DNA from: Selaginella moellendorffii
Lineage: Eukaryota; Plantae; Lycopodiophyta
Assembly: GCF_000143415.4 (NCBI RefSeq)
Contig: NW_003314267.1
Location: forward strand, 2,707,839-2,771,838
Reading direction: 5' to 3'
DNA length: 64,000 nucleotides
Part shown: one piece after another, positions 12,302-55,550 of the stretch
Layout: every line of letters starts with the position of its first letter
How positions within the stretch are numbered: the stretch's first letter is position 1
Program-made: the position numbers and the translations under genes
The notes under the pieces: generated by a model
Told to the model about the DNA's origin: nothing
Databases searched by the model: none
Seen by the model: only the letters and a program-made list of their open reading frames with translations

Positions 12302-13174
12302 ATGACGCGATACTCAATCGATTACTCGACAAGGCTGGGGCGTGGTACCGGTGGAACGGTGAGAGAGGGGATAAATCTCGACACTATGGAGAAGGTCGCC
12401 ATCAAAGAGATGGTAGAGCATCTAAATCTACACGAGGAAACGAAGCTGGTCTATGGTCTTCTGCAAGAATGTCAACATGAAAACATCGTCAAGCTTCTGG
12501 ACGTGGGCTCGATTGGAGGTAAAACGTACATGGTGTTCGAGCACATGTTTGGGGATCTCTACAAGTTCAAGAAGAGATTGGGCATGCTTATGAAGAGAAC
12601 CCTCAACAGGGAGGAGATCAAGACGATCATCGAGCAGATCCTTCAAGCCCTAGCCTACATGCACGAGCATGGCATCGTTCATCAGGACATCAAGACCGCC
12701 AACGTCCTGATCAACAAGGAGGGCACCAAGGTGAAGCTGTGCGACTTTGATCACGCGAGAAGGGTGACGACGCCCCCAAGAGACCCAGAAACGATTGGAA
12801 CGCTGGCCTACAACGCGCCGGAGATCATCCTGGGCGACACCCAAGAGCTGGGAAGTGGCGTGGACGTGTGGGGCGCTGGAGTGATCCTCGCGGAGCTGGT
12901 TCTAGGGTACAACCCTTTCAGCGTTGTACGCGAGAGCCACGCCGCCAGAGAGCTTTACAGGGTGGTGGAGGAGATCAAGGAGAGGCTCCACAGGGAGATT
13001 GGCGACGAAGATATTCTTGAGCTCCTGGACAACATGCTGGTTTGGGAGCCGGAGGAGAGATGGAGTGCCGAGAGAGCTCTTTCTTCCAGTTTCTTTGAGG
13101 ATGGGACTCGCCAAATGTGTGGAGATCCATACCAGCAATTGACTTGTAAAATGGCCACACAATGCGTAATATAA
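12302..13174 (+). CDS. Intronless, divergent CDK/CMGC-like Ser/Thr protein kinase
   Basis: 290-aa ORF with GRGTGG, VAIK, HENIVKLLD, HQDIKTAN, LCDFD, YNAPE, DVWGAG and ERWSAERAL. Confidence 0.85.
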   Translation: MTRYSIDYSTRLGRGTGGTVREGINLDTMEKVAIKEMVEHLNLHEETKLVYGLLQECQHENIVKLLDVGSIGGKTYMVFEHMFGDLYKFKKRLGMLMKRTLNREEIKTIIEQILQALAYMHEHGIVHQDIKTANVLINKEGTKVKLCDFDHARRVTTPPRDPETIGTLAYNAPEIILGDTQELGSGVDVWGAGVILAELVLGYNPFSVVRESHAARELYRVVEEIKERLHREIGDEDILELLDNMLVWEPEERWSAERALSSSFFEDGTRQMCGDPYQQLTCKMATQCVI

Positions 13175-15726: not shown

Positions 15727-16052
15727 CGCCAAGAACTCGCGTTTGCCAGAGGAGATTGGACCATCTGGTTCTTAAACTTGCTGGCCACTCCAGCCTCCAA
15801 GCCCTGGGATAGAACTTTCCATCGTCGCCATTGTAATTTTATTCCTCTCTCGCGGAAGCCGCCACCACGACTGTACGAGATGGCTCCACTGTGGTCGTAT
15901 ATTCCGTCCTGCGGTGGCATATCTTTCTCGCGCGCAGTAGATTTTAAAAAATTTTAGATTCTTCCCTGAAAAACGTGTCGGAGTTTCACCACTTATTTGT
16001 GCTGTGACACTTCCATACCTCTTTAGTTTACACTCGCGGTTATGAAGAAACT

Positions 16053-24596: not shown

Positions 24597-27500
24597 TTAC
24601 ATCCATGGCTGCCATCCCACCCAGAGGCGCCCCAGGAGATTTGGATCGGTGGCTTGATCAACCAAACAATCCACCTGTTCCTCCACCGACGCGCAGATCT
24701 TCCTGTCGATCCGCCGCCTCGTGTTCTTAACTGGATCACCCAGCACCGCCGCCTCGATCGCAGGCATCCACGGCGTCCCGGCGTGAACCGAGCTCTGGAG
24801 CTCCCCGAGCGTGACATGCGCTGGGTTCCACAGGTCGAGCTTCCTCTGCGCGTTCTCGATCTTGAGCTCTACGTGCTGCTGCTCGTGGCTCTCCTCCTCG
24901 CCACCCCGGATGCTCGCGGTTCTCGCCGCCTCCTTTTTCCAGTCCACCAGCGGCTCCCTCACGAACACGTCCATGACCGCGCATATCATCTGCCGGCTCT
25001 TGTGGAGCGCGCTCAAGACCCGGACCATGTCGTTCTTGAGCAGTCCCAGCGAGTCGAGTGGCAGCAAAACGTTGGTCAGCTGCGGCGTGAGCCGGAAGGG
25101 GATGAGCTCCGGGACGGGGAGGAGGATCACTCCGGTGCCAAAGCTGTAGCCAAAGTCGATGGGAACGAGCGAGCCTGTTTGCATGTCGATCAGAGTGTTG
25201 GCCAGGTGCCTGTCGCCAACTCCGGCAATGTATCCGCAGATGCTCATCACCGAAAGGCTTCGAGCAAACTGGGAGCGCATCGCCAAGAAGGACTCGGCGC
25301 TGCTCGTCCGCTTGTACAGCCCCGTCTTGAGAGCATCCCACGGCACCTGAGCTACGAGCGCGTTCATCCTCGCCTCCATCTCCCCCGCCTTCACCTTGGT
25401 GTAGAGATTCTTGTAGCAGTCGTGGACGCTCTTGGAGCCGCCTTTCTTCTCCACCCACTGGTGGTACTGGTTCCTCAGCTCCACCAGGAGATCGCCCGCT
25501 TTCTCCTTCCGCTTTGCGGCCGCCAGCTGCTGGGCCACTCCATCCTTGATCACGTCGTCGAGAACGCAGGTGTTGTCCACGAACTGGAGCAGCCCACACT
25601 GCTGGGAGACGGGGATGACGGCGTACGTCCTCATCGAGAGCTCTCGCTTGGCACACGCGCCGTCTTCCCTGAGAACGCTGTTCATCTTCGCAAACAGCTG
25701 CTCGATGCGCTGGTCCAGCCGCAAGTCCTCGCCACCCTTGACGATGAACTTGTACTCTTTCTCGTCGGATCCCCGCATCGTCAAGATCTTTGGGCGTTGC
25801 TTGGAGCTCAAGCTGATCAGAGTCTCGTCGAATCCAACTAGTGTGATGTGCGATGAAACGTCGGGGCACTGCAAACCATCATACTGTCCAGGTATCTCGA
25901 TCAAGTCATCGCTGCTGCTGCCGCGTCCTCTTGGCTGATCGAAGTTTGCCATCCACTTTGAAAAGGAAGCCAGGCTTAACTTCCCCCCGGGCAAGTCCTT
26001 GATAGCTTTCTGCAAGCTCGTCAGGACTCCAGCGATGGCTGTCGCAAACTTCTTCTCGTCCATCTGTAGGAGCTTGCTACCGTCTTCGCCAAGAGCCTTC
26101 ACAACCGGCTTGGAGTAGTCCCTCGCAAACTTGACGTTGTATTCTCCGGCCTGTCTGGTCTCATTGCGCATGGCTTCCACGTCCAAACAGTCCGCGAAGA
26201 CTGCTCGAAATGTCTCCCGAGCTTTGGTACGATTGCCAGACATGAGGCAGCTCTTCACTTCGCAGAGACCATCAAACAGCCGCTTCTCGGGAAAGGTAAG
26301 GTCTTCGAGAGCTCTCACAAGGCCTTCAAAGAGAGGACTTTTCAGAGTGGCTGCCAGCTTCCGAGTCCTGTCCAAGCCGACAGTTCCATACTGATCTTTG
26401 CTGACGTGAAACGGGAAGAAGAGAGCCTGTGGAAAGTGTTGCGCAATGCTTTCCAGTATCCCAATGAAAAGGCCGCCTTCTCTCGAGTCCATCAAAGCCA
26501 GCAGTTGTGGCAACCATCCTAGGAAGATCCAGCTTGGAACCTTGTCAATCCGGGCCGAGAAGATTGCCTGAATCTCTTGGTGGCCAGCCATTGATATGAG
26601 CCTGGCTACTGCAAGCTGAGGCCCGACTGAAGCATCCATCGACAATGTCCGCAGCATGTTCGTCACCATAGCTTCCCGAAACACCGAAAAGCTTGTCACT
26701 CCAAACGACTGCCTGCTGTCTTGAATGCTCCTCCTGACCTCACTCTTCCACTTGGAGTCGTCTGCCGTGTTGAGAAGATCATCGCAGAAGCATGCAAACT
26801 TGAACGATGTCCTGGCCATTTCACGAGACGGTGGCACGCTGTCGGCATTGCGGAGCAACTCTGAGTACGTCTTGTAAGCAGAACCAAGGAGAGCCATGGA
26901 CTGGCTTAGAGCGTTCGTATCCAAGTCCTTGTCAATCAAAAGGTCCAGCTTCGTTCGGCCGAGCTGCGCGGAAGTGTCGCTCTCCACCAGCATAGTGACT
27001 CTGCGCCAGTCATCACAACCCGATATGCTGGGCTTACTTGCCTGCTTACGAACGTAGTCCAGCACCTGGTGCACAAAAGAAAAAACGTTTTAAAAGAAAA
27101 TTCGATAGAAAGCAAAGAACCTGTTCTAGCATTGCTGCGGTGCTCTTTGGATCCCTTTCCGACGTGCGAAGTGCTTGAAGACAACGAGGCTTGACCAGCC
27201 GTTTAAAAACGGTGGGATTGAAGCTTGTTTTCTCTGCCACGGCCACGTATTCGTCCATATATTTCTACGAAGAACATGATCAGAATTCATACTTGACAAA
27301 AATCGAAAGGTATATTAGTTCCTCACCTGTGCAACGCAGTAGGCTCCCTGTTTCATCACTCCCCTGGAAGCCTGAAGAAACCCAAAGGCACGCTCCTCGT
27401 CAAGCTGTTTGGTGAAGTTCTGCCTGGCTTGGTCAGCCTTAGCCTCTGGTGTAGTATTAAACAGGCCCTGGAGCTTCTGTAGAAACACCAGTCGGTTTTG

Positions 27501-30500
27501 AAGTATATCATCCCATGCTTCGACGTCATCTCTCTTGGTTGAGGGCCAACGCTGGCGCCATTTGCTCAATAGCCTGCCAAAACATTTTAGCAAGCAGAAA
27601 ATCACGGAATGAAATATACCTTGAAATGTTCGACCGGTCTGGTCTCGAAGAAAAATCGACAAACTCCTCCAGTTCCACAGCCCTTTGTAGGATACGAACT
27701 TGCAGTCGCCTAGCGCCAATCGCGAGAGGATGCAGAGCGGACCACCTTTTCCTGAAAGTCTTGTAACATTCGGCCAAGTAGCATCTAGCATGATCGATCT
27801 CGTCGTTGAAAACCGCAGATGCCGCGACTTGTGTGCCAAATCGTTGCAGAAGGACGTCCCTTTTGGTGGAATCCTCCAAAGACGTTTGCAGGAATTTCGT
27901 CAGCAAAGATTGATGTGTAGGAACTTTTAACGCTCCTTTCACGAAGAGTCCCAAGTACGGGTCTTGAAGCTTCGGATGCCAGAGCTTCTCCAGGTCATAC
28001 TCATCGGTCTCATCATTCTTCACTTGCAGTAAAGCGTCTTCCATGATTTCGCCCCAGCGGGTCAAGTCGACGAGGCACGCCAGTCGTTGATTGTACCACA
28101 AGTCTTCCTCGACTTTGGAAGCAGTGCCTTCTGGAGTCTCTGCATACGAAGCAAATATATATAAAAAGGAGAAACAACAACATAACGTACCGTTGATAGC
28201 CTTGTCATAAAGCACTAGAGCTCGATCAGTATCTCCTCGAACCTGGGACTCCAGCGCCTGATGGCTGATACTTTGCGTCGTGAGGCGGTTCAGGTAGAGC
28301 GATAAAACATAATCGTCCTCTCCAATCGCGTTGTAAAGACGTGCAAGTTCCAGCCATGCTTCTTCTGTAACTGCATTATCTTGAGAGGTTTGGCCCGATG
28401 GCCCTCTGTGTCTTTTTGCAGCGTTGAGGTTCGGTCTTGTCCCATGAAGAATTTGCTTTTCCAGAAGCAGAATGCCGGAATGGAAATTCTGTGAGTTGTA
28501 GCTCGCGGAACCGGCAACTTCTGGCTTTATCCAGGCGTCTCTATCTTTTAAACAGAGATCCTGGATTGTCCCGACCAATGTGCTCTCGCTGTGAGTTCGT
28601 TCTAGCGCGTTCTCAAAGCCTGTCCTGATTTCAGTCTTCACTGTCGTAACATCGTTCTGCCAGAAGGCCCCGAAAATAGTCGATAGTAAAAGTCTAGCAA
28701 AAGTTGCGTCCCGCTCAGCTAGTGACCCCATGGGGCCGATAATGTCTTCGTGTTTAATCTCAATATCAGGAAGTTCACCTGTAGACACGGAAGAACAATG
28801 AAGTAAGTTACAACACGAAGATTCAAGCACCTGTACGGTATTGCCTCATGATCTGGACCTTGTTGGCACGTTCAAAAGCTTCAGCTGACTGCAAGGCCTT
28901 GCGTTTCCTTGTTGCATTAAAAACGTTTCTCAGCGTTCCAGCGCGGGATTCCTTGACGTGGTACAAACGCCGGTTCAACCTTGTGACAGGATCAACGACC
29001 GCCACGTTTTGAGATCCGTCCGCTGCGTTTTGAGTCTGTCCAGGTTCGTCACTGCCCTCAAGTATTGTCATTGACGGGGTGTATGATGCCGTTGCTCGGA
29101 TCAATCCTCCACGACCATGGTTGACAATGGCCAGTGATGCATTAGCCTCGGCAAGCTGACTTTCTTTCATAGAGCGAAGTGATCCTGCTTCCGAGAATAG
29201 GGGAGTCATTGGCAAGCTGCCCCCCACCGCCGAGGAATCAATTTGTCGCTCCTGAAACTCACAATCGGAGAGAGGAGCATTAAAGATAGGACGTCGGTAG
29301 TCCACTGATCTCTGACACAGCTGCAAGTTTGAAAAGGTTTAGTCACAAGATCGCGAATGGCAAAATGACAAACCTTGAGCAGCAAAACGTTTGTAAACGG
29401 AGTCCAGTGGCTCTCGATATCCGGAAGGTGCATGTTGTTGAGGACGTGACTGAAACGCTCCATCATGTTTTCCGGAAGATGGGCATCCCAGAACGATTGT
29501 AGACTCTGTCGCACGCCGTCCGCCACATCACACAATCCCAGAACCAAAAATCGAGCGATCCTGCTATCGTGCGGCAGCTTCTTGGTTTCATAAAGAAACA
29601 TAAGCATCTGGTAGAACTGCAAGCGGCATTCCTCTGTTTCGTAATGCACGAATGCATCACAAGTCTCCAAAACGACCTTTTGAGTGCTATTCGGGTCGGC
29701 CTCCCCTTTCACCACCTCCGCCAAAAGTTGTAGCGACCGGAGCTGACCTTTTGGATCGCGGTGACGAAGAAGCTTTGAGAGAAAAGAGACGATCATGTTG
29801 AAGTAGCTGTTGGCTGTGGCCGGATCTCGAAGTAGGATATCCAGCGCAACTGTCTTTGAAGGACCATGCAATCGAGGCAGCAAGTCGATCAGCACATGAA
29901 TGTAAGCTCCAACATAAGGAGGGTACTTGGAAGTCAAGCGGTCCAATATGACGAGGCACTTGCTGTAGTTTCTTTCCTTGAAGGTTGACATGAAAAACTG
30001 CTTGAACTTGTTCTCGACGGCGGATAAGTCTGTATCCTCGCTTTTGTCTCTTAATACCATCCCAAGCACGTCCGCGGAAGCCGCAAACACTTCCTTCGCT
30101 TTTAGCTTTAGATTGCTCAGAAGCGTCTCATAGACATCCTCGCTTCCAACAGCGAGCCTCTCGAGTCCTTGGTTTACTGATCCTGAGGACGACACCACTG
30201 TCGCAAACAGCTGCAGCCCCACGGACTTTTGAATAGCGAGCTGCCTGTCTGAAGTGTTCGTGCTTTTGCCTCCAGCTTGAAGATACTTTAGAATCAGCCT
30301 TCCGTCAATGTTGACGCGGTCCTTCCAGAGCTGTATAAATGCTTTGATGATCTCCACATTCGCTCTTAAAACCTGGCTTGACTCGTGCGCTGCTACTGCC
30401 ATCAAGTGATCAATAAACCTCGAAGCAGTGTGCCTATCCGTCGGCTCCTTGACATCCCAATGAAGAATTGTGATTGAGATGTCACGAAGGACGTAGTGAA

Positions 30501-33500
30501 AGGAGAAACCTCCTGTAGTTGGCGGGTCGTGAAGAATGACGTTCACTAGCGGCTGGAAGAACGTGTCTGAGAACCTGGCAAAGACTTTCCTGGCCTTCAC
30601 CACCACCTTCCCCAAAAACAACCGAACGTTTGCATGAGTTGAACTGCTCTCCAGCGTTGCATGGATAGATTTCATCCACTCGGGCATCTGTTGGCTGCTT
30701 GGACTTCCAAATCTCGAATGCAAATGATCGATAAGCCTGAGGATAACTCCCATGCACGGATGCTGATCGAAATCGTCTTGATCCAGAGCCACAAACTCGA
30801 CGTGTTCCTCCGTTTGTTCGTTTGCTGCTTGCTCTACGTTTTCATCAGTCTCTGGTAAAGATGCCATACTGTTGTCCCCGACAAAGCTGCTGATCACAGT
30901 CGGTTCTTGGCTCGTGCTCATTCCAACAAGATACTGCGACGAGAGTGTCATGGAAGACGTTCCACGGCGTAGCCCGTGTCCCTTGATCATGGCTCGGATT
31001 CCCTTCACGATAGCATGGCTCTCAACCAGTGTGCTCGTTTGAACGGGAAAAGAACTGTAAACTTTGCTGCAGTCGACGAGGTGTTGCCACAGAGGATTTC
31101 CAGCGTCTTTGAACAGCAGATTGAAGATCTTCTCGTCTTTCTGCGTGCACATTACCACGGCCGCCAAGCAGGTGTATGCCGATACGTGTAGATCACGCCA
31201 AACGCTCACATTCTCTTGAAACGGATAGACTCTAGGATCGTTCTTCCCACGGGTGTCATTCGATGCAAACTTCATCAACTGCTGATAAGAGAATGTGATC
31301 CTTTCCTTGTCAACTTGAGTAAACAGCAGCTCCAGAAGTGTATAGCTGTATATCTTTGCAAGTAAAAGCTCCTGTTCCGTTTCCACGTCTGGACTCATTA
31401 CTGTCCGACCGAGAGAATCCATGAGCTCGGGTACACGAGGCGTGAACCAGCCCGTAAGCGTGTCAACCGGAGACAAGCAGATCAGAGGAACGAAGAAGTA
31501 GTCCAGCACTGCTTTTCTGAGCCTGGGAAGTTTGGTTGCATCTTTCAAAACGTCCATACAATAGCTGAACGCAGTAACTCTTTTGTCTCCAATATTCTGT
31601 GCATAAGCTCGCAGCGCTTCAGAAAGTGGTGGCGTTGTGAGGCCTGTCGGGTTCTGAAGAAGCGGAAATAGAACCTCCAGAGCGTCTAAGTTTCTCGACG
31701 ACACTATCGCACCGATCAGCAGGTCGAGAGTCCCCAGATAGTCTGTTCTCTCCATAGAACCGTCAGGAAGATCAGCTTCTCTTACCAGAAGATGGCTGGT
31801 TACAAGAGATGTCAAGCTACCGATCAGCCGGGTACGGAGGCTTGAGTCCATGGACTCCTCCAGGAAAAAAGGGACGAGCAATAGAGCACTCTTCCTCAGC
31901 ATTGCGCACTCGCTCCAAACTCCAAGTGTGGTAGCACTTAAAAACGCGAACAGCACCTCCAGAATAAATTGGAACGCCGGTTGAGAGCCACCGACAACTG
32001 AAGCTTTATCCAGCACCAAGAGCTTGTGAATAATACCCGCAATAAACTGTTTGTCCGTGACAGAGCTACCATCCAAATAGCATGGTCGCAGTTCCGTAAG
32101 GTGCAAGAGAAATTCCCCCACAAAGCTTCCTCTTGTTATCGTTTCACCTTGATACTCGTCCAGAACAGCATGAAGGATTAGCCTGGCCGTTTCATTCCTC
32201 ACGGACTCCTTCATCAGGACGGGTAGGCATTTCTTGTAGAAGAACTTCACTTGCTGGATCACCACCTTTCGAAAGCTTAAATAAAATCTACCTCCTGGAG
32301 TTACACTGTCGGTGCCACGGTCGACTGTGTCCCCGTTCTTGTCCAACACAATACGAAGAAGTTGGTCCACTACTACCCGTAATGCTACAGACAGTCGTAT
32401 AATCTCCACGTAAAGTGGCTCGGCCAACGGTGATACTGGTTCTTTGCTGATGGTGTATACTGTATGCAAGAGCCGTTCACTTAGCTGCTCCGACCTCTCC
32501 TTCCCCAGCGTGGGAACCAAGGCTCCCACAGTATGCAAATGCTGATACGCTTTTACGAGGTTCATACTTTGAGAGAGTCTGCCTTCCGTGATCTGATGAA
32601 GTTCAAGCGTTGAGATATCAAACTCCGAGAACGTGTTGAGCATCTCCCGAAGAACTTGTACTAAACCATCCTTGAAGCCAGGCGATATACGTGTCAATGA
32701 CCAAAGAACGCTCGAAACAAGCATGCGAAGCTCTTCTGCACCCGATGACTCTGGTGTGAAAGTCGTCATTTCTGATGGCTTAAATAGCAAAAGGCATAAT
32801 AGGTGCTGTAGCTTGTCATAATGAAGCGGCAGGATCTCAGCTAGAAGCTTCTCTTTGTCATCACGAGAAGGTGTTTCAACTGATGAAGGCTCGCTCGCCC
32901 CTGTTCCCATCTGTATAATGTCCTTGAAAAGAGCCATCAGATGCAGAATTGCACTATCATTTTCCTTCAGAGGAATGCACCTTGCAGGGAGCTTTTCTAC
33001 AAACTGGTTGATCCGAGAAAATATCTGCGTTCTGAGCGGTTCAATCTCCTCCAAACCTATCATTTGAGCTCCTAGGTACCAGTGTAGAGAATGTAAAGCT
33101 GTCGAAAGCTCAGGCATTGACTTTGCAGTGAATATATTCGAAGGCAGTTTCTCGAATAAACCTGCTAACATATGAAGGCGCTGGGTGCCAGTGAACCTCT
33201 CGCGAAACCAGTGCACGCACGATCCTCCTGCAAAGCCATTAAAGATGTCTCAGCAAAACACTCACAACAAATGTTACATACCCGGCAAGGCAGAACAGAC
33301 CGCAGATAACAAGGCCATACATTTCGTGCGACACCTCTCGTGACTAAGTTTTGTTTGCTCGAACAGCCACGTCATGAAGTCTTCCAAGGTACAGAATAGC
33401 ACTCTGTCCTTCTTATTCTTCTGAAGCAAACTAATATTTCGCACAATAAGCTTCTCAATGCCATCCAGAGCTTTATATGCTTGCTTTATTGTTCCTGTCA

Positions 33501-36500
33501 CAAAAAGCAAAGTAAACTAGGCTTTCTCTTATTTTTCCCTTACCAATCTGCTCAGCATCCGTATCACCCACGCGTAAAGATTTCAGGAGGAAAAATGCAA
33601 GCTCAAAAATATAGCGGTCCACAATGGATGAGTTCTGCCGCAGGATAGGATAAATTTGATAGGCAGCCATAGATGCACCAAGTCGATGGTAAGGACTTGG
33701 ATGGTCCATGCGATTGTACAGGCGACGTAGCATAGACGTCACATTCACAAAGTTACTAGCCTGAAACAAACGAAACACAATCATGTCTCAAACTGCTAAA
33801 AACTGTCAAACCTCTGGAGGAGCATGCCGAATTGACCAACGCAAGAACTCGCTAAAACATCGAGAGCATAATTCTCTGCAAGGAGGACAATATGAATTAA
33901 AAGAAAAAGCAAAACACTTATTGACACACCTCAAGGAACCGTTTTCAGCGTCGACAAGTCCTTCAAGTATAGCGTCTAAGAGGGCCATAGTTTCCGGATT
34001 TTCCTTTTGAGTATTGCTTGTCATCCAATGAATCAACTGCATAGCGAACTCACTGAAAAGTTGTTGCGTAACCTGGAACGATATCGTGATTAAATTTCGA
34101 ACTATACAAGCTAGAGAGTTATTACCGGTTCAACATCTGTCGCAAGCCAAAGGACAGAAGGAAAAAGCTTTCTATAAAGTTGCACATAGTTTCCCTGAAC
34201 AAGAAACTCGATAAGGAAAGAGACGATTTACTATGTTCGCTTACCAGATTTGTCTCGTCATTTCTGGTTCGTAATGGGCCTTTTGCAGCATTTCCCAGCA
34301 TAAGCAAACACATTGCATGCAGCAACTCAGACGAGAGTACTTTAATTTTCCGGTCGCTGGAAGATTTGGCCAATTCCACAATCCTGGGAAGCAAACAGTC
34401 TACGAGCACAATTAATGACATACCCAGTAATTTTTATTCTTACCAAGCCAAATGTCCAGCTTCTCATCTCTTAAAGGTACTGTAAACTTAATACGATCCA
34501 CCACGTCCCAGGACAATCCTCCCGTCCCGCTAGATTGCAAAAGATTCGCGTCAGGAACAAGAAAATGACCATATGCCCCTATTTGACCAATAAAACGTTG
34601 AACGCGAACTTGAATATCTTCGAATGTAACAACCTACAAAAAAAATTAAATCTCGACTATGCAAAGAAGCAAGTACCTTTGTTTTCTCTTTTTCTAAAAG
34701 CTTCAGTGTTTTAGAATCCATGGTCTTCTTTCTGGAGTCCGCTACTTCAAACAAATAGTCTCGTAGACAGGGGACTATGTCCTGTAACTGCTTTTGTAGT
34801 TCTTTTGGATGCAAGTTATACCACCGCTGGAGAGAATCCAGTGCAATATTTGCCAAAGGATGATATGTGGCTGGAAGTTAAGGACAAAAGACTGATCGAA
34901 AGAAAATTCTCAAAAAGGATATCTGAGTCCAATTTTTAATGCCAGCTTCAAGGGCCTTACTATTGATGCCAGATCTAGAAGGGTCGGAGGGCACGAGAGA
35001 CATAGATGAAGACAAGAACCAAGAAGCTCGAGTTTATAGCGCCTGCTAGTGATTAGGACCTCGTGTAAGAATTCTTGGATCATTACATGAGAAGACTGCA
35101 CAGAAAATAACCTGAGAATAAAGCCCAGAACAGAGATTTAGCGGTACCTGGTCTTTCTCGAAGTAGCCTTTCTGATCACCAATACTAATCACAGCAGCCA
35201 AAAGCTTGTAGAATCCGCTTATAAGAGGATATTTCCTTGAGAGATCGATCAAACATCGACAGAACGGAAAAATCCACTTTTCCATCAAAGACGCATGGTC
35301 ACTATAAGAAAAAGATAAAACGCCAGGAACTCAGAGGAAGTAAGTAAATACCTTGCGAACAGACGAAGAACAAAATCCACCTACAAAGAAATAAGAAACA
35401 AGAGTCAGCGGGACAAAAAAACCTCCCAGGTAGTTCAATACCAAGTTCAGATATTTCAGCATCTGATTTTTGTCCAACGGTTCTATAGGAGCTTCAGCTT
35501 CCGGCTCTTGTCCTGTTACTTAATAAGTTTTGAGGAAATGCCGGGCAACCATGCGTACCTGAAAATTCCGAGCTATTTGCCTTGTTCAGGTCTTTGACCC
35601 TATACTTTAAGTTGAGCTCCATCATCAGCTTCATAATACTACGGATTAACGAGTCGAAAATTGTAGTTTTAAGATCGGAAACATTCACGCTTAACACCGC
35701 GAGATCGACGCCCACAATGCCATCATCATCTTGTAAGTTTTCCGTATGTGATGGCTCGGAAATGTTCGTCAGGATCTGGCACCAAAGGTCACAATAGCTC
35801 TTCCACAAGAAATCTGACGCCGGATCCGTATCTGTTGCACGATCAAGAGAAGACCATACTGCAAGGATAAAAACACAAGTCGATTCACGTCAGCTTTTAC
35901 ACAGCGTACTCACCAACATTCATCAGGAACATGACAAAAAGATTCCCCTTCGGATACAAAGCCTTTAAAAGACTGCTGATGGTGCTATGAATTGCCACCC
36001 GTTGCTTAGGAAATAAGGAAGGGTACTGGAAAAATATACGACCAGTAACCTGCACAAAACAAGAAGAAAAGAAACCATAAAGAATGACCATATTACCAAA
36101 ACAAACCCACCTCGGTAATCAATGAAACCATGAAATCTTCCACCCGGTCAATATATACAACGATATTCGCAAATGCACCTACTACGGTCACCGCGTATCC
36201 TAATTCTTCATGACTATCACCACCTCTGCATAAAGATAGATGACATTAGACAAACATAAAAGAGATAGACAATGCATAAACCTGGAGAAACTTCCAACAA
36301 AAGGGACTAGTCTTTGAAAGGCTTTCTCAAGATCAGATTTCCCAGAATATTTTACGATAGGTCCTGCAAGCTTTCCGATGCCCCGAATAGCCAGCGCTAC
36401 AAGCTTCGGGTTATCTTGCCTGAACTCAAGTGTGTCAAGCATGTGCTTCATTAATGCCTGCAGGAAAAGCTCATCAAAGCCGTGATCGGAAACGCAAGTT

Positions 36501-45473: not shown

Positions 45474-46381
45474 TCAAATAATCTTCTTCTCGGATTTAAT
45501 TGTTTTGTAAGAGTCTACCAGCTCTCTAAATTTTCCTCTCATCTCCTCGACTGTACAAAAGTGAACTCGTCACATTTAATCTACCAAGAAGTTCTTTCTT
45601 ACCTTTGTCGGGGTTCTTGTCTGGATGGAATTGCAAAGCTCGCTCTCGAAAGGCCATCTTGAGACAAACCAACCAAGGTTAGCTTTTAGCGCGTAAAGCA
45701 CTTGTCTCACCTTGATTTCCTCTTCGGAAAATGCTTCGTCTCTGAATCTGGATATATAGAAACGAGTCGTCAATGCGAAAGAACCTCAAGCTAGACATGA
45801 ACTTACGGGTCAAGGCCGAGCACTGCGTAGTGGTGCCGCAGCCTGGATCGTTCTTTAAGCTTGGAAGCAGCTTGCTCTTTAGTTTTGGCCTCATCAACTT
45901 TCTCCTCATTCCGTTGGGGATGCTCTTCCCACTTCTGATATCTAGCCGTGCGGACATTCCTGTAGCTAGACTTCAAACTGTCGTAGGCACCCTGCATTCG
46001 AGCAACACGCTCCTGAAGGAAAAGGTGTAAGAAAGCCCTCACAGAACGAAGGAAAGGCGAGCTTCTTACTCTCCGTTCTAGCTCATCCAAATGACTCTGC
46101 CGGAGATCCGACTCATCCGGTGCGTACCATTTGGCTTCCTTGTAAAAAACCCAGAGACTAGCTGAATAAGAAAGGAAAAACAAAAGCTCCCCGAGCAATA
46201 CCTGGTTAAACGAAGAGGGCCGTCTGAGTCTCCGGAACTTGGTCGCCTGTCAAGAGAACACCAAACGTCGATCGATCAGCCGAGGAATCACATCGCTTAC
46301 AGCAACTCCAGCGACAAGCGCCGCAAGAGCGTAGCTCTTCCATCCGAATCGCGCCTCGCGACTCTTCTGCCTCGTCTCCAT
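45474..46381 (-). CDS. DnaJ-domain protein with N-terminal hydrophobic segment and C-terminal J domain
   Basis: HYAVLGLD, SEEEIK, AFRERALQFHPDKN and KFRELVDSY across short exons. The start codon is inferred. Confidence 0.75.
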
Positions 46382-46440
46382 TTGCCTTGCCTGGCATTTT
46401 AGGGCTAGGGCAAAACCACTTAGATGAAGCAGGAGGTTTT

Positions 46441-46821
46441 ATGCTGCGCGTCACTCCAATGCTCTTCCTGACACATCTTTCATTCTTGCGGCGGATCGGC
46501 TTCTCCCCTTGCCGCGGCGGCGACAACGAGGGCAGGGATTCCGGCGATCGAGCTAGATCATCCAGGAAATCGAGGAACGGTATGGACAATCATCCAAACA
46601 AGGCTGATGGAGATGGGGCTGGATCGAAAGAGGAGCAGCCGCCGCCGGCCAAGAAAGAGGAGGAGGAGGAGGAGGATGAGGAGGATCTTGGGCCGCCTCC
46701 AGAGAAGCCGCTTCCAGGCGATTGCTGCGGGAGTGGCTGCGAGAGGTGCGTATGGGACATTTACTTCGACGAGCTCGAGGACTACAAGCTGCGCAAGGCA
46801 ATGAAGAGCTCCAAAGACTGA
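46441..46821 (+). CDS. Oxidoreductase-like N-terminal domain protein (OXLD1-like), intronless
   Basis: PPPEKPLPGDCCGSGCERCVWDIY motif. Confidence 0.88.
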   Translation: MLRVTPMLFLTHLSFLRRIGFSPCRGGDNEGRDSGDRARSSRKSRNGMDNHPNKADGDGAGSKEEQPPPAKKEEEEEEDEEDLGPPPEKPLPGDCCGSGCERCVWDIYFDELEDYKLRKAMKSSKD

Positions 46822-46861
46822 TTAATTATTATAAAATAAAAAGAGGCGGATATTCTTCGAA

Positions 46862-47608
46862 TCATTCAGTGGCGAGCCCTAGAACCGAGACGCGCGAAGA
46901 ACACCCCTCCGACGAGACGGCTGGGCAATCCACGAATCCGGTGCCGGATCTACTACTGCGTCGACCGGGACGCCACAGCTGCGGCTGCGGGACATGATCC
47001 ACCCGCTGGCGGATCTGGGCGCGGCCGGGATCGTGCCCAACGGGAGCAGCTACGACGCCGACTCGAAGCTCCGCGCGCTGCACACGCGCACGATTCTCGA
47101 GTGCAGCAGCAGCGGGAGCAGGGATTACCCGCAGCGTCGTGGCGAAGTAGTCGTGATCGTCCGCGAAGGCGCAGCTTCCGTGGGCTTGCTGGTATTAGAT
47201 CAGCGCTTGCATGATACTTCCAGATCGATTGGCAACACAGATTGCCGACTTGATGCCCGAGCTTCGCTCGCGGTGGCCCTCTCTCACATGCCCGCAGAGC
47301 AACGGCGACGATTTCTGGGAGCACGAGTGGGAGGCGTTGTATGGCGTGGAGTCGCAGTACTCCGGAAGAGACGTGGCGTTGGACAGACCGTGGAGCGTAA
47401 AATTGGCAGCGAATCCCGGCGGGTAGCAGCACTGGTTGATGCTACAAAAGGCGTTTGGCCACTGCGTCCAAAAAAGAAAAGCTTACGAGGATCTTTGCAG
47501 AATACTTTTGACTTGGCCTGCCTCGAGAACAAGGAGAAACATGTCGAAGCCCTGAATCCCTCGCGCCAGAAACACCATCGCGATCGCCGCTATTGCAGTG
47601 CGGCCCAT
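46862..47608 (-). pseudogene. RNase T2 paralog scrambled by three internal micro-inversions
   Basis: Minus strand: MGRTAIAAIAM...FDMFLLVLE, WPNAFC...FTLHGL, AHGSCAF and GFVDCP...*. Plus strand, interleaved: IADL...FWEHEW, HPLADLGAAGIVPN...ILEC and IYYCVDRDA. Confidence 0.9.
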
Positions 47609-47837
47609 GGCGATGACGATGGATCGAGCTAGCGGTGCGTGTGCGTGTGCATGCACGCATTGACCGCTTCAAGCATTATAGTTTATTCATGGCCAGGTTG
47701 GAAATATTAGTTTTCTCAGGCAGCGAAAGAAATGCTCCCCGAATTGATTTGCTACGTTCATTCATCCCCTTTGCGTGAGCGGGACAAGAAACGGTCCCCT
47801 CTCGCTTCTTTTTATTTCCACTTTCATCGGGTGCTGG

Positions 47838-48661
47838 TCACAAGGTGGCGATCTCATGATCGTGATCACGTTTGATACCTCGGCCAAACGATGGGAATTC
47901 CACCTGCGTGGTGCACTTGCTGTTGGGAAAGACGGGGCAGTCGATGATGGTAGACGCGTCGGAGGCGACGCAAAAGTAGAGCTGGTAGAGCTGCGCTGTC
48001 CGCGACGAATCCCGGTTGCATTCGATCCCGATAGTGTGGCCCAGCCCGTCTTCCAGCGCAAGCTGGATGCTCTGGAGGCTGTAGAGGCGATTGTTTGGGC
48101 GGATTCCAGCGCTGGCCAGGTAGCCGAGGGGATCCACTTGCTCCCGCAGCGCTAGCGATCTCTCAAAGTATTGGTGCTCGTCCCTGAAGGCGCAGGTGCC
48201 GTGCTTCTCCCACTCGTGCTCCCAAAACTCGACGGAGTTGCTGCTGGGACAGTCAAGTGATCCCCATTCCCGGTTCATAGCTCTACGAAGATCCGAGATC
48301 TGATGGACGAAGAGATCTTAGCTTATAGTTACTGCAATCGAGTACTACTGACCTGGGACAGCTCAAAGGGATTGGAGGGGTCGCAGAATTGGGGCCAAGT
48401 TCCATCATCCTTGTTAGGCCACAGGCCGTGTATCGAAAAATCTTCGGCCGGCTTGCCTGTTGTTGGATAGCAGCATGCAGCTTGACCCCGATCACAGTAT
48501 GCTCCTGGCCACTGCGCAGCAACGAATTACTGTCACAGATACTCTGTTTTTAGCATTGGACTTGCCTGGAGAACGAAGTAGAAGAAATCGAATCTCTGCG
48601 CTCCTGCGATGATGAACAAGTTGCTGCAAACTAGCGCGACGACGATCGCACAGAACCCCAT
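47838..48661 (-). CDS. Secreted ribonuclease T2 (S-like RNase, RNS1/RNS3 type)
   Basis: Signal peptide, FDFFYFVLQWPG, FSIHGLWP (CAS I) and FWEHEWEKHGTC (CAS II). Confidence 0.96.
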
Positions 48662-48837
48662 TGCTTTGCGAATCTCTCTGCCCGCCCGCAAGAAATCCCT
48701 TGAAACGGAGAGTCTGGCAACTACACGTTTATGATGGCGAACCACCTTGAATATGCTTCTGGGAGATTCGAACAAGCTTAAAGGTCTTCGGGGTTTTGTT
48801 TCGTACAAGCTTAATGGTTTTAAAGGGCCTTTTGCTT

Positions 48838-54783: not shown

Positions 54784-54997
54784 CAAGCTGTAAGCAAACT
54801 TTTTCCTCTCCCCTAGTGATAAGTTACCTACTGGGACCGTGTCGGTGTGATGGATTGACATGACTCCTTACCAAAGAGATAATTGCAGCTTTGAATTGAA
54901 TCGAATCGAGTTGCGTGCGCACAACGCAACTCCCCGTGCATCGGTGATCAAATCCAGCCATCCCCCCACTCCTTCGACAAGCTTATCGACCGATCGT

Positions 54998-55550
54998 ATG
55001 TATGACTCTCCTGCACTCTGGTGTTGTTCGCTTTCTTCGTCGGCTCGGCTGTTTCGTCCGACCCGGACCCCCCTCCAGGACTTCTGCATCGCTAATCTCA
55101 CCATGGACTTGAATATCAACGCCCACTTCATCTATTGCGGCCTCGTCAATTCTTCCAAATTCACCAACGTGGACCGAGCTGGTGCCACCTTTGGAACAGT
55201 CCAACTCTTCCCGGGGCTGGGCCTGTCCATTGGCAGGCTCGACTTCGCACTGGGTGGGATCATCGTTCCGCACACCCATCCCCGAGCTTCGGAGCTCGTC
55301 TACGTCGAAGAAGGCAGCGTCCACGCCGCTATCATCACCTCGGACAGCCGGCTGTATGCCAGAGTGATCACCAAGGGCGAAGTCATGAGGGTCTCATCCA
55401 CTGGCAGATGAGCGTGGGGAAGACCAACGCCAAAGTCATCGTCACGCTCAACTCCCACCTCCCTGGACTCTAGTTCGTTGCTCAGTCCATGTTTGGATCC
55501 GGAATTCCAGACGAAGTGCTTGAGAAGACGTTCTTCCACACCATTTCTCA
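54998..55550 (+). pseudogene. Germin-like protein pseudogene
   Basis: DPDP/LQDFCIA, PHTHPRASE and GLIHWQ motifs, with a +1 frameshift at a C-run, small deletions and an in-frame TAG. Confidence 0.85.

What the first reader, a model, noticed from the sequence alone, without database searches (positions are those of the whole stretch)
46862..47608. RNase T2 duplicate scrambled in place by three micro-inversions; two flip back exactly in frame
Seen in sequence: next to the intact RNase T2 is a paralog whose pieces keep gene order but alternate strand. Inversion B (46985-47128, 144 bp = 48 codons) is bounded by perfect 7-bp inverted repeats, GCTGCGG (46978-46984) and CCGCAGC (47129-47135). Inversion C (46944-46973, 30 bp) is bounded by GTG/CAC. 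Re-inverting both gives an uninterrupted ...AHGSCAFADDHDYFATTLR-LRDMIHPLADLGAAGIVPNG...ILECSSSGSRDY-PQLC-RIYYCVDRDA-TGFVDCPAVSSEGC...* that follows the neighbour's C-terminal half motif by motif. Inversion A (~47191-47327) carries intron 2 plus the IADL...FWEHE exon start and leaves a 1-nt lesion at one junction. Inference: three clustered inversions within ~400 bp suggest one replication template-switching or repair episode. The locus could also make partly antisense transcripts against related RNase T2 genes. A reversible switch is conceivable but unsupported, since junction A and the HGL(WP) site look damaged.
Basis: partly seen in the sequence, partly recalled or inferred. Interest (0 to 1): 0.85.

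Follow-up and report, generated by a model that had tools for sequence, protein, structure and literature searches.

The report
Three tiny flips break one allele
In the spikemoss Selaginella moellendorffii, one of the plant's two copies of a ribonuclease gene is knocked out by three tiny in-place DNA flips at short inverted repeats, while the copy on the other haplotype is unflipped and present in all four runs examined. This is a real and unusually dense example of a known kind of replication or repair error, not a genetic switch.

Summary
The window is Selaginella moellendorffii scaffold GL377571.1. The RNase T2 paralog at 46862-47608 (minus strand) has three segments on the opposite strand. 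Putting B and C back gives an open frame to the native stop.

The assembly's other haplotype (GL377660.1) settles it. It is collinear over 23 kb with about 1.3% substitutions, carries the same gene unflipped and intact, and differs there by exactly these three reverse-strand blocks.

Contigs from four public runs carry the unflipped form. One 132-nt contig and one run's word content carry the scrambled form. So this is a heterozygous null allele, not an assembly artefact or a reversible switch.

- **B:** clean, 144 nt between perfect 7-nt inverted repeats.
- **C:** 30 nt with only GTG/CAC.

The most likely cause is template switching at inverted repeats or microhomology, probably in one episode. 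A fourth 38-nt flip lies 8 kb away on the other haplotype, which hints at a high micro-inversion rate in this genome.

The parts
46862..47608 (-). Scrambled (null) allele of an RNase T2 paralog on haplotype GL377571.1. It is annotated on the wrong strand as the chimeric model SELMODRAFT_407198.
47522..47608 (-). Exon 1 (start codon 47606-47608; signal peptide through the FDMFLLVLE motif), not inverted
   Evidence: splice joint 47461/47522
47462..47521 (-). Intron 1, 60 nt, GC-AG type. A contig of run X1 skips it.
   Evidence: table 5 (skips 60, CT..GC)
47328..47461 (-). Exon 2, not inverted. It carries a window-specific 9-nt in-frame deletion between 47382 and 47383 that removes W-P-V of the HGLWP active-site motif. 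47328-47335 (TGGGAGGC) is the surviving arm of the 8-nt inverted repeat of inversion A.
   Evidence: (table 4)
47186..47327 (+). Inversion A: intron 2 plus the start of exon 3 (from IADL to FWEHE) now on the plus strand. The left junction has lost one repeat arm plus 2-3 nt (net 9 nt). There are also 2 adjacent substitutions at 47191-47192 and a 1-nt insertion at 47208.
47129..47185 (-). Un-inverted piece of exon 3 (AHGSCAFADDHDYFATTLR). 47129-47135 (CCGCAGC) is the right arm of inversion B.
46985..47128 (+). Inversion B: 144 nt (48 codons), a clean flip between perfect 7-nt inverted repeats. Both arms are kept.
   Evidence: (I11)
46974..46984 (-). Un-inverted 11 nt between C and B. 46978-46984 (GCTGCGG) is the left arm of inversion B.
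46944..46973 (+). Inversion C: 30 nt (10 codons), bounded by GTG and CAC in the window (GTG and TAC in the intact allele). There are 4 substitutions in 31 nt against the intact allele.
46862..46943 (-). Un-inverted 3' end of exon 3 with the native stop codon (46862-46864)
47838..48661 (-). Neighbouring intact RNase T2 gene (238 aa; exons 48566-48661, 48353-48511, 47838-48299). Spliced contigs cover it in three runs.

Best explanation
This is a heterozygous loss-of-function allele of a tandem RNase T2 paralog in the Selaginella moellendorffii reference plant.

On haplotype GL377571.1, three short segments of the gene were replaced in place by their own reverse complement: 30 nt, 144 nt and about 142-149 nt. 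Haplotype GL377660.1 keeps the ancestral, intact gene. That form turns up in every run examined, in contigs that look like RNA by a guess only.

The flips most likely arose when a replicating or repairing DNA end switched to the opposite strand at a short inverted repeat, copied backwards, and switched back at the partner repeat. This is short-range template switching, or microhomology-mediated break-induced replication.
- B used a perfect 7-nt repeat at both ends.
- A used a perfect 8-nt repeat at one end and a blunt, lossy junction at the other.
- C used 2-3 nt.

The three lie within 395 nt on the same haplotype, so one multi-switch episode is the most likely history.

Shown: the structure, its allelic nature, the ancestral orientation, and the repeats at the breakpoints. 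Inferred: the replicative mechanism and the single episode.
For: - **Other haplotype.** It is collinear over 23.2 kb at about 1.36% substitutions, with only these three reverse-strand blocks in the gene.
- **Intact allele.** Its product is a full-length RNase T2 (Pfam PF00445, 135 bits). It is collinear with the neighbour at 42% identity, E=2e-56, so the unflipped order is ancestral.
- **Unflipped form in reads.** All four runs laid (one DNA-like, three RNA-like, four studies) give 'opposite strands' joints at 46978/47136 (7 nt shared) and 47183/47335. These contigs carry the other haplotype's SNPs. The DNA-like run X28 has its own private SNPs, so it represents a third, unflipped haplotype.
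- **Scrambled form in reads.** X2 record 9 covers 47106-47237 with 0 differences. It spans the right junction of B and the left junction of A, with the window-specific SNP and indel. X1 record 2 matches window-specific sites in 46771-46918. Run X25 holds 94% of the stretch's sampled 31-mers, whereas a sample with only the intact allele would hold 38%.
- **Repeats at the breakpoints.** In the intact allele GCTGCGG/CCGCAGC and GCCTCCCA/TGGGAGGC abut the breakpoints, each pair with 144 nt between the arms. The chance of a repeat abutting given breakpoints is 6e-5 for 7 nt and 1.5e-5 for 8 nt.
- **Clustering.** P is about 0.003.
- **Known class.** IR-flanked micro-inversions and the two-switch and MMBIR models are described in PMC8755829 and PMC5453318.
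Against: - Nothing dates the three flips relative to one another.
- The A-left junction has no microhomology and lost 9 nt. C has only 2-3 nt of flanking repeat. Potapova et al. argue that such short repeats fit simple two-jump switching poorly. Break repair (MMBIR or end joining) may therefore fit A and C better.
- Substitution density in the flipped interval (3.0% against 1.2% outside; Poisson P=0.004) is no higher than in the rest of this fast-diverging gene. It is not a specific mark of error-prone synthesis.
- The excess of window-lineage changes inside the flipped parts (6:1 against 3:4) is not significant (Fisher P=0.27).
- The scrambled form was seen bridging junctions in only one listed contig, plus X25's word share. 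X25 may be the sample the assembly came from.
Confidence: 0.6

Rival explanations
1. The mutation class is the same, but there were three separate events. The first flip killed the gene. The other two accumulated later in a genome, or a GC-rich repeat-laden exon, that is unusually prone to micro-inversion.
For: A fourth, independent 38-nt micro-inversion lies 8 kb away at 55125-55162, this time derived on the other haplotype. Unchecked notes from this scan list many small precise intragenic inversions in this genome. The 551-nt gene region of the intact allele holds 14 inverted-repeat pairs of 7 nt or more. The junction types differ: B is clean, A is lossy, C has almost no repeat.
Against: Even at the locally observed density, 3 of 4 events within 400 bp has P of about 0.003. 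All three are on one haplotype. None was found in the non-coding half of the 23 kb, so relaxed selection alone does not explain the clustering. A and B have the same 144-nt spacing.
Confidence: 0.3
2. The flips came from double-strand breaks and re-ligation of excised fragments in reverse orientation (end joining), not from replicative template switching.
For: The A-left junction is blunt, with a 9-nt loss and nearby small mutations. C has only GTG/(T)AC at its ends.
Against: B keeps both 7-nt arms and its exact length. End joining would achieve that only by chance. A 30-nt fragment is an unlikely substrate for excision and re-ligation. The repeats abut the breakpoints exactly.
Confidence: 0.12
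3. This is an assembly or cloning artefact of the Sanger draft, and the true sequence of this haplotype is unflipped.
For: Per-haplotype coverage in the original assembly was probably low (my own recollection, not checked here). Most public runs hold only about 0.3-0.4 of the stretch's words, as a sample with only the intact allele would.
Against: X2 record 9 reproduces 132 nt across two junctions with zero differences, including window-specific SNPs and an indel. X25 holds 94% of the words. No known assembler error inverts 30 nt and 144 nt exactly at inverted repeats.
Confidence: 0.03
4. This is a programmed, reversible DNA-inversion switch that turns the RNase gene on and off.
For: B and C flip back exactly in frame. 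Both orientations occur in the same runs.
Against: Orientation is tied to haplotype SNPs: every listed unflipped contig carries the other haplotype's letters. The arms of A, B and C share no motif. A has lost an arm and the intron donor, and the active-site WPV is deleted. The neighbouring genes are DXS, DnaJ, Oxidored-like, plastocyanin and Rpc31, with no recombinase.
Confidence: 0.01

Closest known systems
Definite micro-inversions between human and chimpanzee (Potapova, Kondrashov and Mirkin 2022, PMC8755829)
   Same: A segment is replaced in place by its exact reverse complement. Perfect or near-perfect inverted repeats of 3 to more than 8 nt abut the breakpoints. The explanations offered are two template switches or MMBIR after a break.
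   Different: Those are 17-33 nt long, isolated, and very rare (59 in a whole-genome comparison at about 1% divergence). Here two of the three have 144-nt interiors. Three lie within 395 nt. One has a lossy junction. A fourth lies 8 kb away.
Short-range template-switch mutations, four-point model (Loytynoja and Goldman 2017, PMC5453318; Walker et al. 2021, PMC7954356)
   Same: Each flip can be written as one switch-and-return event with four points. A's 9-nt loss follows naturally if the return point is offset. Inter-strand switching inverts the spacer between repeat arms.
   Different: The model explicitly does not treat several successive rounds of switching. Most of its events are a few to tens of nucleotides long and are seen as mutation clusters, not as exon-sized flips.
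Iterative template switching at inverted repeats in complex genomic rearrangements (e.g. DUP-TRP/INV-DUP, PMC11293582; MMBIR/FoSTeS from general knowledge)
   Same: Several strand switches at inverted repeats within one replication-repair episode give alternating orientation (abstract seen).
   Different: Those act at kilobase to megabase scale and change copy number. Here there is no gain of copy, the segments stay in order, and the scale is 30-150 nt.
Plant S-like RNase T2 genes (Pfam PF00445)
   Same: The intact allele and the neighbour both match PF00445 over nearly the whole profile. Both have a signal peptide and the HGLWP and FWEHEW motifs.
   Different: Both alleles of this paralog have Ala where the second active-site motif normally has Lys (EWEAHGSC against EWEKHGTC in the neighbour; that Lys is usual there is from general knowledge). 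The two alleles differ mostly by amino-acid changes, so the gene may already be under weak constraint.

Membership tests
IR-flanked micro-inversion (template-switch / MMBIR class) | The segment equals the reverse complement of the same segment in an otherwise collinear allelic or orthologous sequence | tested here: met
   Three reverse-strand blastn blocks (30 nt at 93%, 167 nt at 95.8%, 150 nt at 98%) lie within 23 kb of plus-strand collinearity.
IR-flanked micro-inversion (template-switch / MMBIR class) | Inverted repeats abut the breakpoints in the ancestral form | tested here: met
   B has perfect 7-nt arms. A has perfect 8-nt arms in the intact allele. C has only 2-3 nt, which is weak.
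IR-flanked micro-inversion (template-switch / MMBIR class) | The inverted copy is precise, with no other change at birth | tested here: inconclusive
   B keeps its exact length with 5 substitutions in 158 nt. A lost 9 nt and has junction-near changes. C has 4 changes in 31 nt. Later substitutions cannot be separated from changes made at birth.
IR-flanked micro-inversion (template-switch / MMBIR class) | Both forms exist as real DNA in independent sequencing data | tested here: met
   The unflipped form is in 4 runs from 4 studies. The scrambled form is in X2 record 9 (0 differences across 2 junctions) and in X25 (94% of words). Only contigs were available, not raw reads.
RNase T2 (PF00445) | Pfam match above the gathering score over the whole domain | tested here: met
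   The intact allele P0002 scores 135.3 bits against a cut-off of 26, over profile positions 20-188 of 188. The annotated window model P0001 scores only 27.2 bits over positions 65-93.
RNase T2 (PF00445) | Both conserved active-site motifs (HGLWP and EWxKHGTC) | tested here: not met
   The window allele lacks W-P-V through the 9-nt deletion, and its second motif is split by inversion A. The intact allele has HGLWP but Ala in place of Lys in the second motif. The window copy descends from the family but cannot encode an active member.
Programmed DNA-inversion switch | Both orientations occur on the same genetic background | tested here: not met
   Every listed unflipped contig carries the other haplotype's SNPs. 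The scrambled contig carries the window's SNPs.
Programmed DNA-inversion switch | A common recombinase site in the repeats and a recombinase gene nearby | tested here: not met
   The arms GCTGCGG, GCCTCCCA and GTG are unrelated. The genes called within about 10 kb either side include no recombinase.

The most novel reading that the evidence does not exclude
Selaginella moellendorffii may generate short in-place inversions (tens to a few hundred nucleotides, at 3-8-nt inverted repeats) at a rate orders of magnitude above that measured in great apes. It may sometimes make several in one multi-switch episode. That would make micro-inversion a major source of heterozygous gene knockouts in this lineage.

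The evidence here is four such flips in 23.2 kb of haplotype comparison, hitting two genes, one on each haplotype. Two of the flips share an identical 144-nt spacing between repeat arms. That spacing is close to nucleosome or Okazaki-fragment size, which might point to a replication-linked unit.

In heterozygotes the scrambled allele's transcript would be perfectly complementary to the intact allele's RNA over up to 128 nt. It could therefore act as a natural trans-allelic antisense.
Probability: 0.3. Interest if true: 0.75.

Novelty: new member of a known kind. Interest (0 to 1): 0.5.

Why it matters
- **A clean natural example.** Both the 'before' and the 'after' of a triple micro-inversion sit in one diploid plant. 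The breakpoints can be read to the base, so models of short-range template switching can be checked directly. In particular, it shows whether several rounds can occur in one event, which published models leave out.
- **An annotation error.** SELMODRAFT_407198 is a chimeric plus-strand model built from the flipped pieces of a dead allele.
- **A possible genome-wide pattern.** One further flip was found without selection in the 22.8 kb of flanks. If that density, together with this scan's many unchecked notes of small precise inversions in this genome, holds genome-wide, Selaginella would be an outlier in this mutation class. A haplotype-against-haplotype scan of the existing assembly would test this cheaply.
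- **No new system.** The finding itself adds no new molecular system. The RNase gene is ordinary and may already have been under weak constraint.

Tried and rejected
- **Exact-product look-ups of window-specific ORFs spanning the junctions.** The 212-aa and 71-aa ORFs found nothing, so they add no support for the scrambled form. The look-up of P0002 was also blank.
- **Extending the haplotype comparison beyond 23 kb.** This failed. The kinase ORF at 12302-13171 and its other-haplotype product P0004 are not on record as called genes.
- **Looking for an outgroup to polarise substitutions.** A homologue search with the intact allele returned only the two alleles' own models at E<=1e-10. Polarity rests only on the third haplotype seen in run X28.
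- **Testing for error-prone synthesis.** The flipped interval has 12 substitutions in 395 nt against 1.2% outside (P=0.004). But the whole gene and several intergenic stretches are equally diverged, so I dropped this as specific evidence. The lineage split (6:1 against 3:4) is not significant.
- **One large inversion followed by re-inversions.** Rejected, because that would permute the order of segments, and the order is kept.
- **Gene conversion from a paralog.** Rejected, because conversion cannot invert a segment.
- **Cruciform or hairpin flipping as in plastid loops.** Rejected, because 7-8-nt stems with 144-nt loops are not stable.
- **Earlier scan notes near this place.** None were found.
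- **Limits of the read evidence.** Read laying allows one call, so I could not inspect the 39 unlisted contigs, the run X25, or the cupin flip.

Full report
**What is in the sequence**

The window is nuclear DNA of a plant with short introns. A minus-strand RNase T2 gene of three exons lies at 47838-48661 (238 aa).

Immediately downstream, at 46862-47608, lies a second RNase T2 copy. tblastn with the neighbour's protein finds its pieces in the right order but on alternating strands. The plus-strand hits are 46979-47122 and 47235-47381. Everything else is on the minus strand.

- **B:** 46985-47128, 144 nt, between GCTGCGG at 46978-46984 and CCGCAGC at 47129-47135.
- **C:** 46944-46973, 30 nt, between GTG and CAC.

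Re-inverting B and C by script gives one open frame of 107 codons, from AHGSCAF to the native stop.

**What organism and what the partner sequence shows**

A protein search with the plus-strand ORF over B returned three Selaginella moellendorffii entries:
- The 127-aa model SELMODRAFT_407198, on a 3.97-Mb scaffold.
- Two 'ribonuclease 1-like' isoforms, on a 719-kb scaffold.

Look-ups place the window on GL377571.1 of GCA_000143415.2. They place the isoforms on GL377660.1, in the same gene neighbourhood: DXS, DnaJ, Oxidored-like, two RNase T2 genes, plastocyanin, Rpc31, Branch, fibrillin. GL377660.1 is therefore the other haplotype of the same locus.

Over 23.2 kb (window 36415-59667) the two haplotypes are collinear, with 308 substitutions in 22,659 aligned bases (1.36%). 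Inside the RNase gene the only non-collinear features are three reverse-strand blocks: 46947-46976, 46971-47135 and 47186-47335.

The other haplotype encodes a full-length RNase T2 (PF00445, 135 bits). It aligns end to end with the neighbour at 42% identity. The unflipped order is therefore ancestral and the window carries the derived, scrambled allele. The paralogs are old tandem duplicates, not a fresh duplication.

**Is the scrambled form real?**

I laid Logan contigs of four runs from four studies on 46200-48800.

All four give 'opposite strands' joints at 46978/47136, with 7 shared letters (the repeat arm), and at 47183/47335. These contigs carry the other haplotype's letters at 47023, 47041, 47067 and 47068, and the 9-nt insertion at 47382. 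So the intact allele is present in every run.

The DNA-like run X28 has a 1335-nt contig that is collinear with both flanks and unflipped. It has many private differences, which makes it a third haplotype. This again supports the unflipped order as ancestral.

The scrambled form is supported by three observations:
- X2 record 9 covers 47106-47237 with no difference. It spans the right junction of B, the left junction of A, the window-specific SNP at 47159, the GG at 47191-47192 and the extra T at 47208.
- X1 record 2 matches window-specific sites in 46771-46918.
- Run X25 holds 94% of the stretch's sampled 31-mers. A sample with only the intact allele should hold 38%.

X25 may be the source sample, and the evidence is contigs rather than raw reads. 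Even so, an assembly artefact is very unlikely.

Orientation is tied to haplotype SNPs in every listed contig. That argues against somatic flipping.

**Breakpoints**

- **B is clean.** In the intact allele the arms GCTGCGG and CCGCAGC are 144 nt apart. In the window both arms are kept and the interior is exactly reversed.
- **A is lossy.** In the intact allele, A lies between a perfect 8-nt repeat, GCCTCCCA and TGGGAGGC, again with exactly 144 nt between the arms. In the window only one arm survives (47328-47335). The left junction (47185/47186) has no microhomology and shows a net loss of 9 nt. There are two adjacent substitutions 5-6 nt inside it and a 1-nt insertion 22 nt inside. The loss removes the intron-2 donor and two codons.
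- **C has almost no repeat.** C is 30 nt with GTG on one side and CAC on the other (TAC in the intact allele). It has four substitutions in 31 nt. At least two of them are specific to the window lineage, because X28 agrees with the other haplotype (table 5c).
- **A separate deletion.** A window-specific 9-nt in-frame deletion at 47382 removes Trp-Pro-Val of the HGLWP motif.

**Mechanism**

Repeats that abut the breakpoints (chance 6e-5 for 7 nt and 1.5e-5 for 8 nt) mark the known class of IR-flanked micro-inversions. Two explanations are on offer for that class (PMC8755829; PMC5453318):
- two template switches between strands at the repeat arms;
- microhomology-mediated break-induced replication after a break.

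B fits the two-jump model well. A and C fit a break-repair variant better.

Homologous recombination is excluded by arm length. Site-specific recombination is excluded by the unrelated arms and the absence of a recombinase gene.

Three events within 395 nt on one haplotype is unlikely by chance, even at the high local density (P about 0.003). A and B also share the 144-nt spacing. I therefore favour one multi-switch episode (about 0.55-0.6) over sequential events (about 0.3), but nothing dates the flips.

Substitution density in the interval (3.0% against 1.2%) matches the rest of this fast-diverging gene. It is not a specific mark of mutagenic synthesis.

**Consequences**

The window allele cannot make an RNase. 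Exon 3 is interrupted upstream of AHGSCAF, and the active-site WPV is gone.

The annotated SELMODRAFT_407198 is a plus-strand chimera of the flipped pieces, joined through the flipped intron.

If transcribed from its own promoter, the scrambled allele would carry stretches perfectly complementary to the intact allele's RNA. Shared 31-mer runs span 128 nt (47208-47335) and 67 nt (47069-47135). Whether that matters is untested.

Similarity to the neighbouring paralog is too low for an antisense effect there (77-85% over 40-107 nt).

**Wider context**

Scanning the same 23 kb for other reverse-complement blocks found one more, at window 55125-55162. It is 38 nt at 100% reverse-complement identity, and the other haplotype has 11 extra bases at its junctions. 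It lies in a germin-like cupin gene. There the window keeps the open frame and the F-x-Y-x-G-L motif, and the other haplotype is broken.

That makes four micro-inversions at two loci in 23 kb. Great apes show 59 strict or about 4000 lenient events per genome comparison at similar divergence.

The RNase cluster was the reason this window was chosen, so only the cupin flip is unbiased. One event in 22.8 kb has a 95% interval from 1.1e-6 to 2.4e-4 per base.

Earlier notes of this scan, which I did not check, list many small precise intragenic inversions in this genome, including one allele-specific 259-nt flip and one pair of equal-sized flips. This is a lead, not a result.

**Verdict**

- A single event is unproven.
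- The idea of a switch is not supported.
- This is a new and unusually dense member of a known mutation class.

Noticed in passing
window 55125-55162 (other haplotype: L003 about 15960-16010): This is a fourth micro-inversion between the haplotypes: 38 nt at 100% reverse-complement identity, with 11 extra bases at the junctions on GL377660.1. It lies in a germin-like cupin gene. The window keeps the open frame (annotated model 87 aa, against 121 aa on the other haplotype), and the other haplotype has stops, so that haplotype is the derived one here.
   Followed up: partly
window 54886-54992: A 108-nt stretch just upstream of the cupin gene is present in the window and absent from the other haplotype.
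   Followed up: no
window 47462-47521 and 48512-48565: Intron 1 of both RNase T2 paralogs is of the GC-AG type. Contigs in the runs skip exactly these 60 and 54 nt.
   Followed up: partly
window 47522-48699: One 1071-nt contig of run X1 joins the spliced neighbour RNase T2 to exon 1 of the downstream paralog. This suggests read-through or overlapping transcripts of the tandem genes. A contig alone does not prove a single transcript.
   Followed up: no
window about 24600-36400 (L005 1-1448): A very large minus-strand gene is annotated with DNA-PKcs domains (3914 aa on the other haplotype). From general knowledge this end-joining kinase is missing from many flowering plants. It may be worth noting in a genome that seems rich in small rearrangements.
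   Followed up: no
window 47129-47185 / P0002 residues 108-120: Both alleles of this paralog have Ala where the second RNase T2 active-site motif normally has Lys (EWEAHGSC; that Lys is usual there is from general knowledge). The alleles differ by about 11 amino-acid changes against about 6 silent ones, so the gene may have been under weak constraint before it was scrambled.
   Followed up: partly
window 46862-47185, minus strand as it stands: B and C are multiples of three, and their antisense frames happen to lack stop codons. The scrambled exon 3 therefore still reads open from AHGSCAF to the native stop, with 58 residues replaced by antisense-encoded ones.
   Followed up: yes
window 47473-47700 in run X28: The DNA-like run X28 carries a third, unflipped haplotype with a dense run of private differences over exon 1, intron 1 and the promoter of the paralog.
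   Followed up: no
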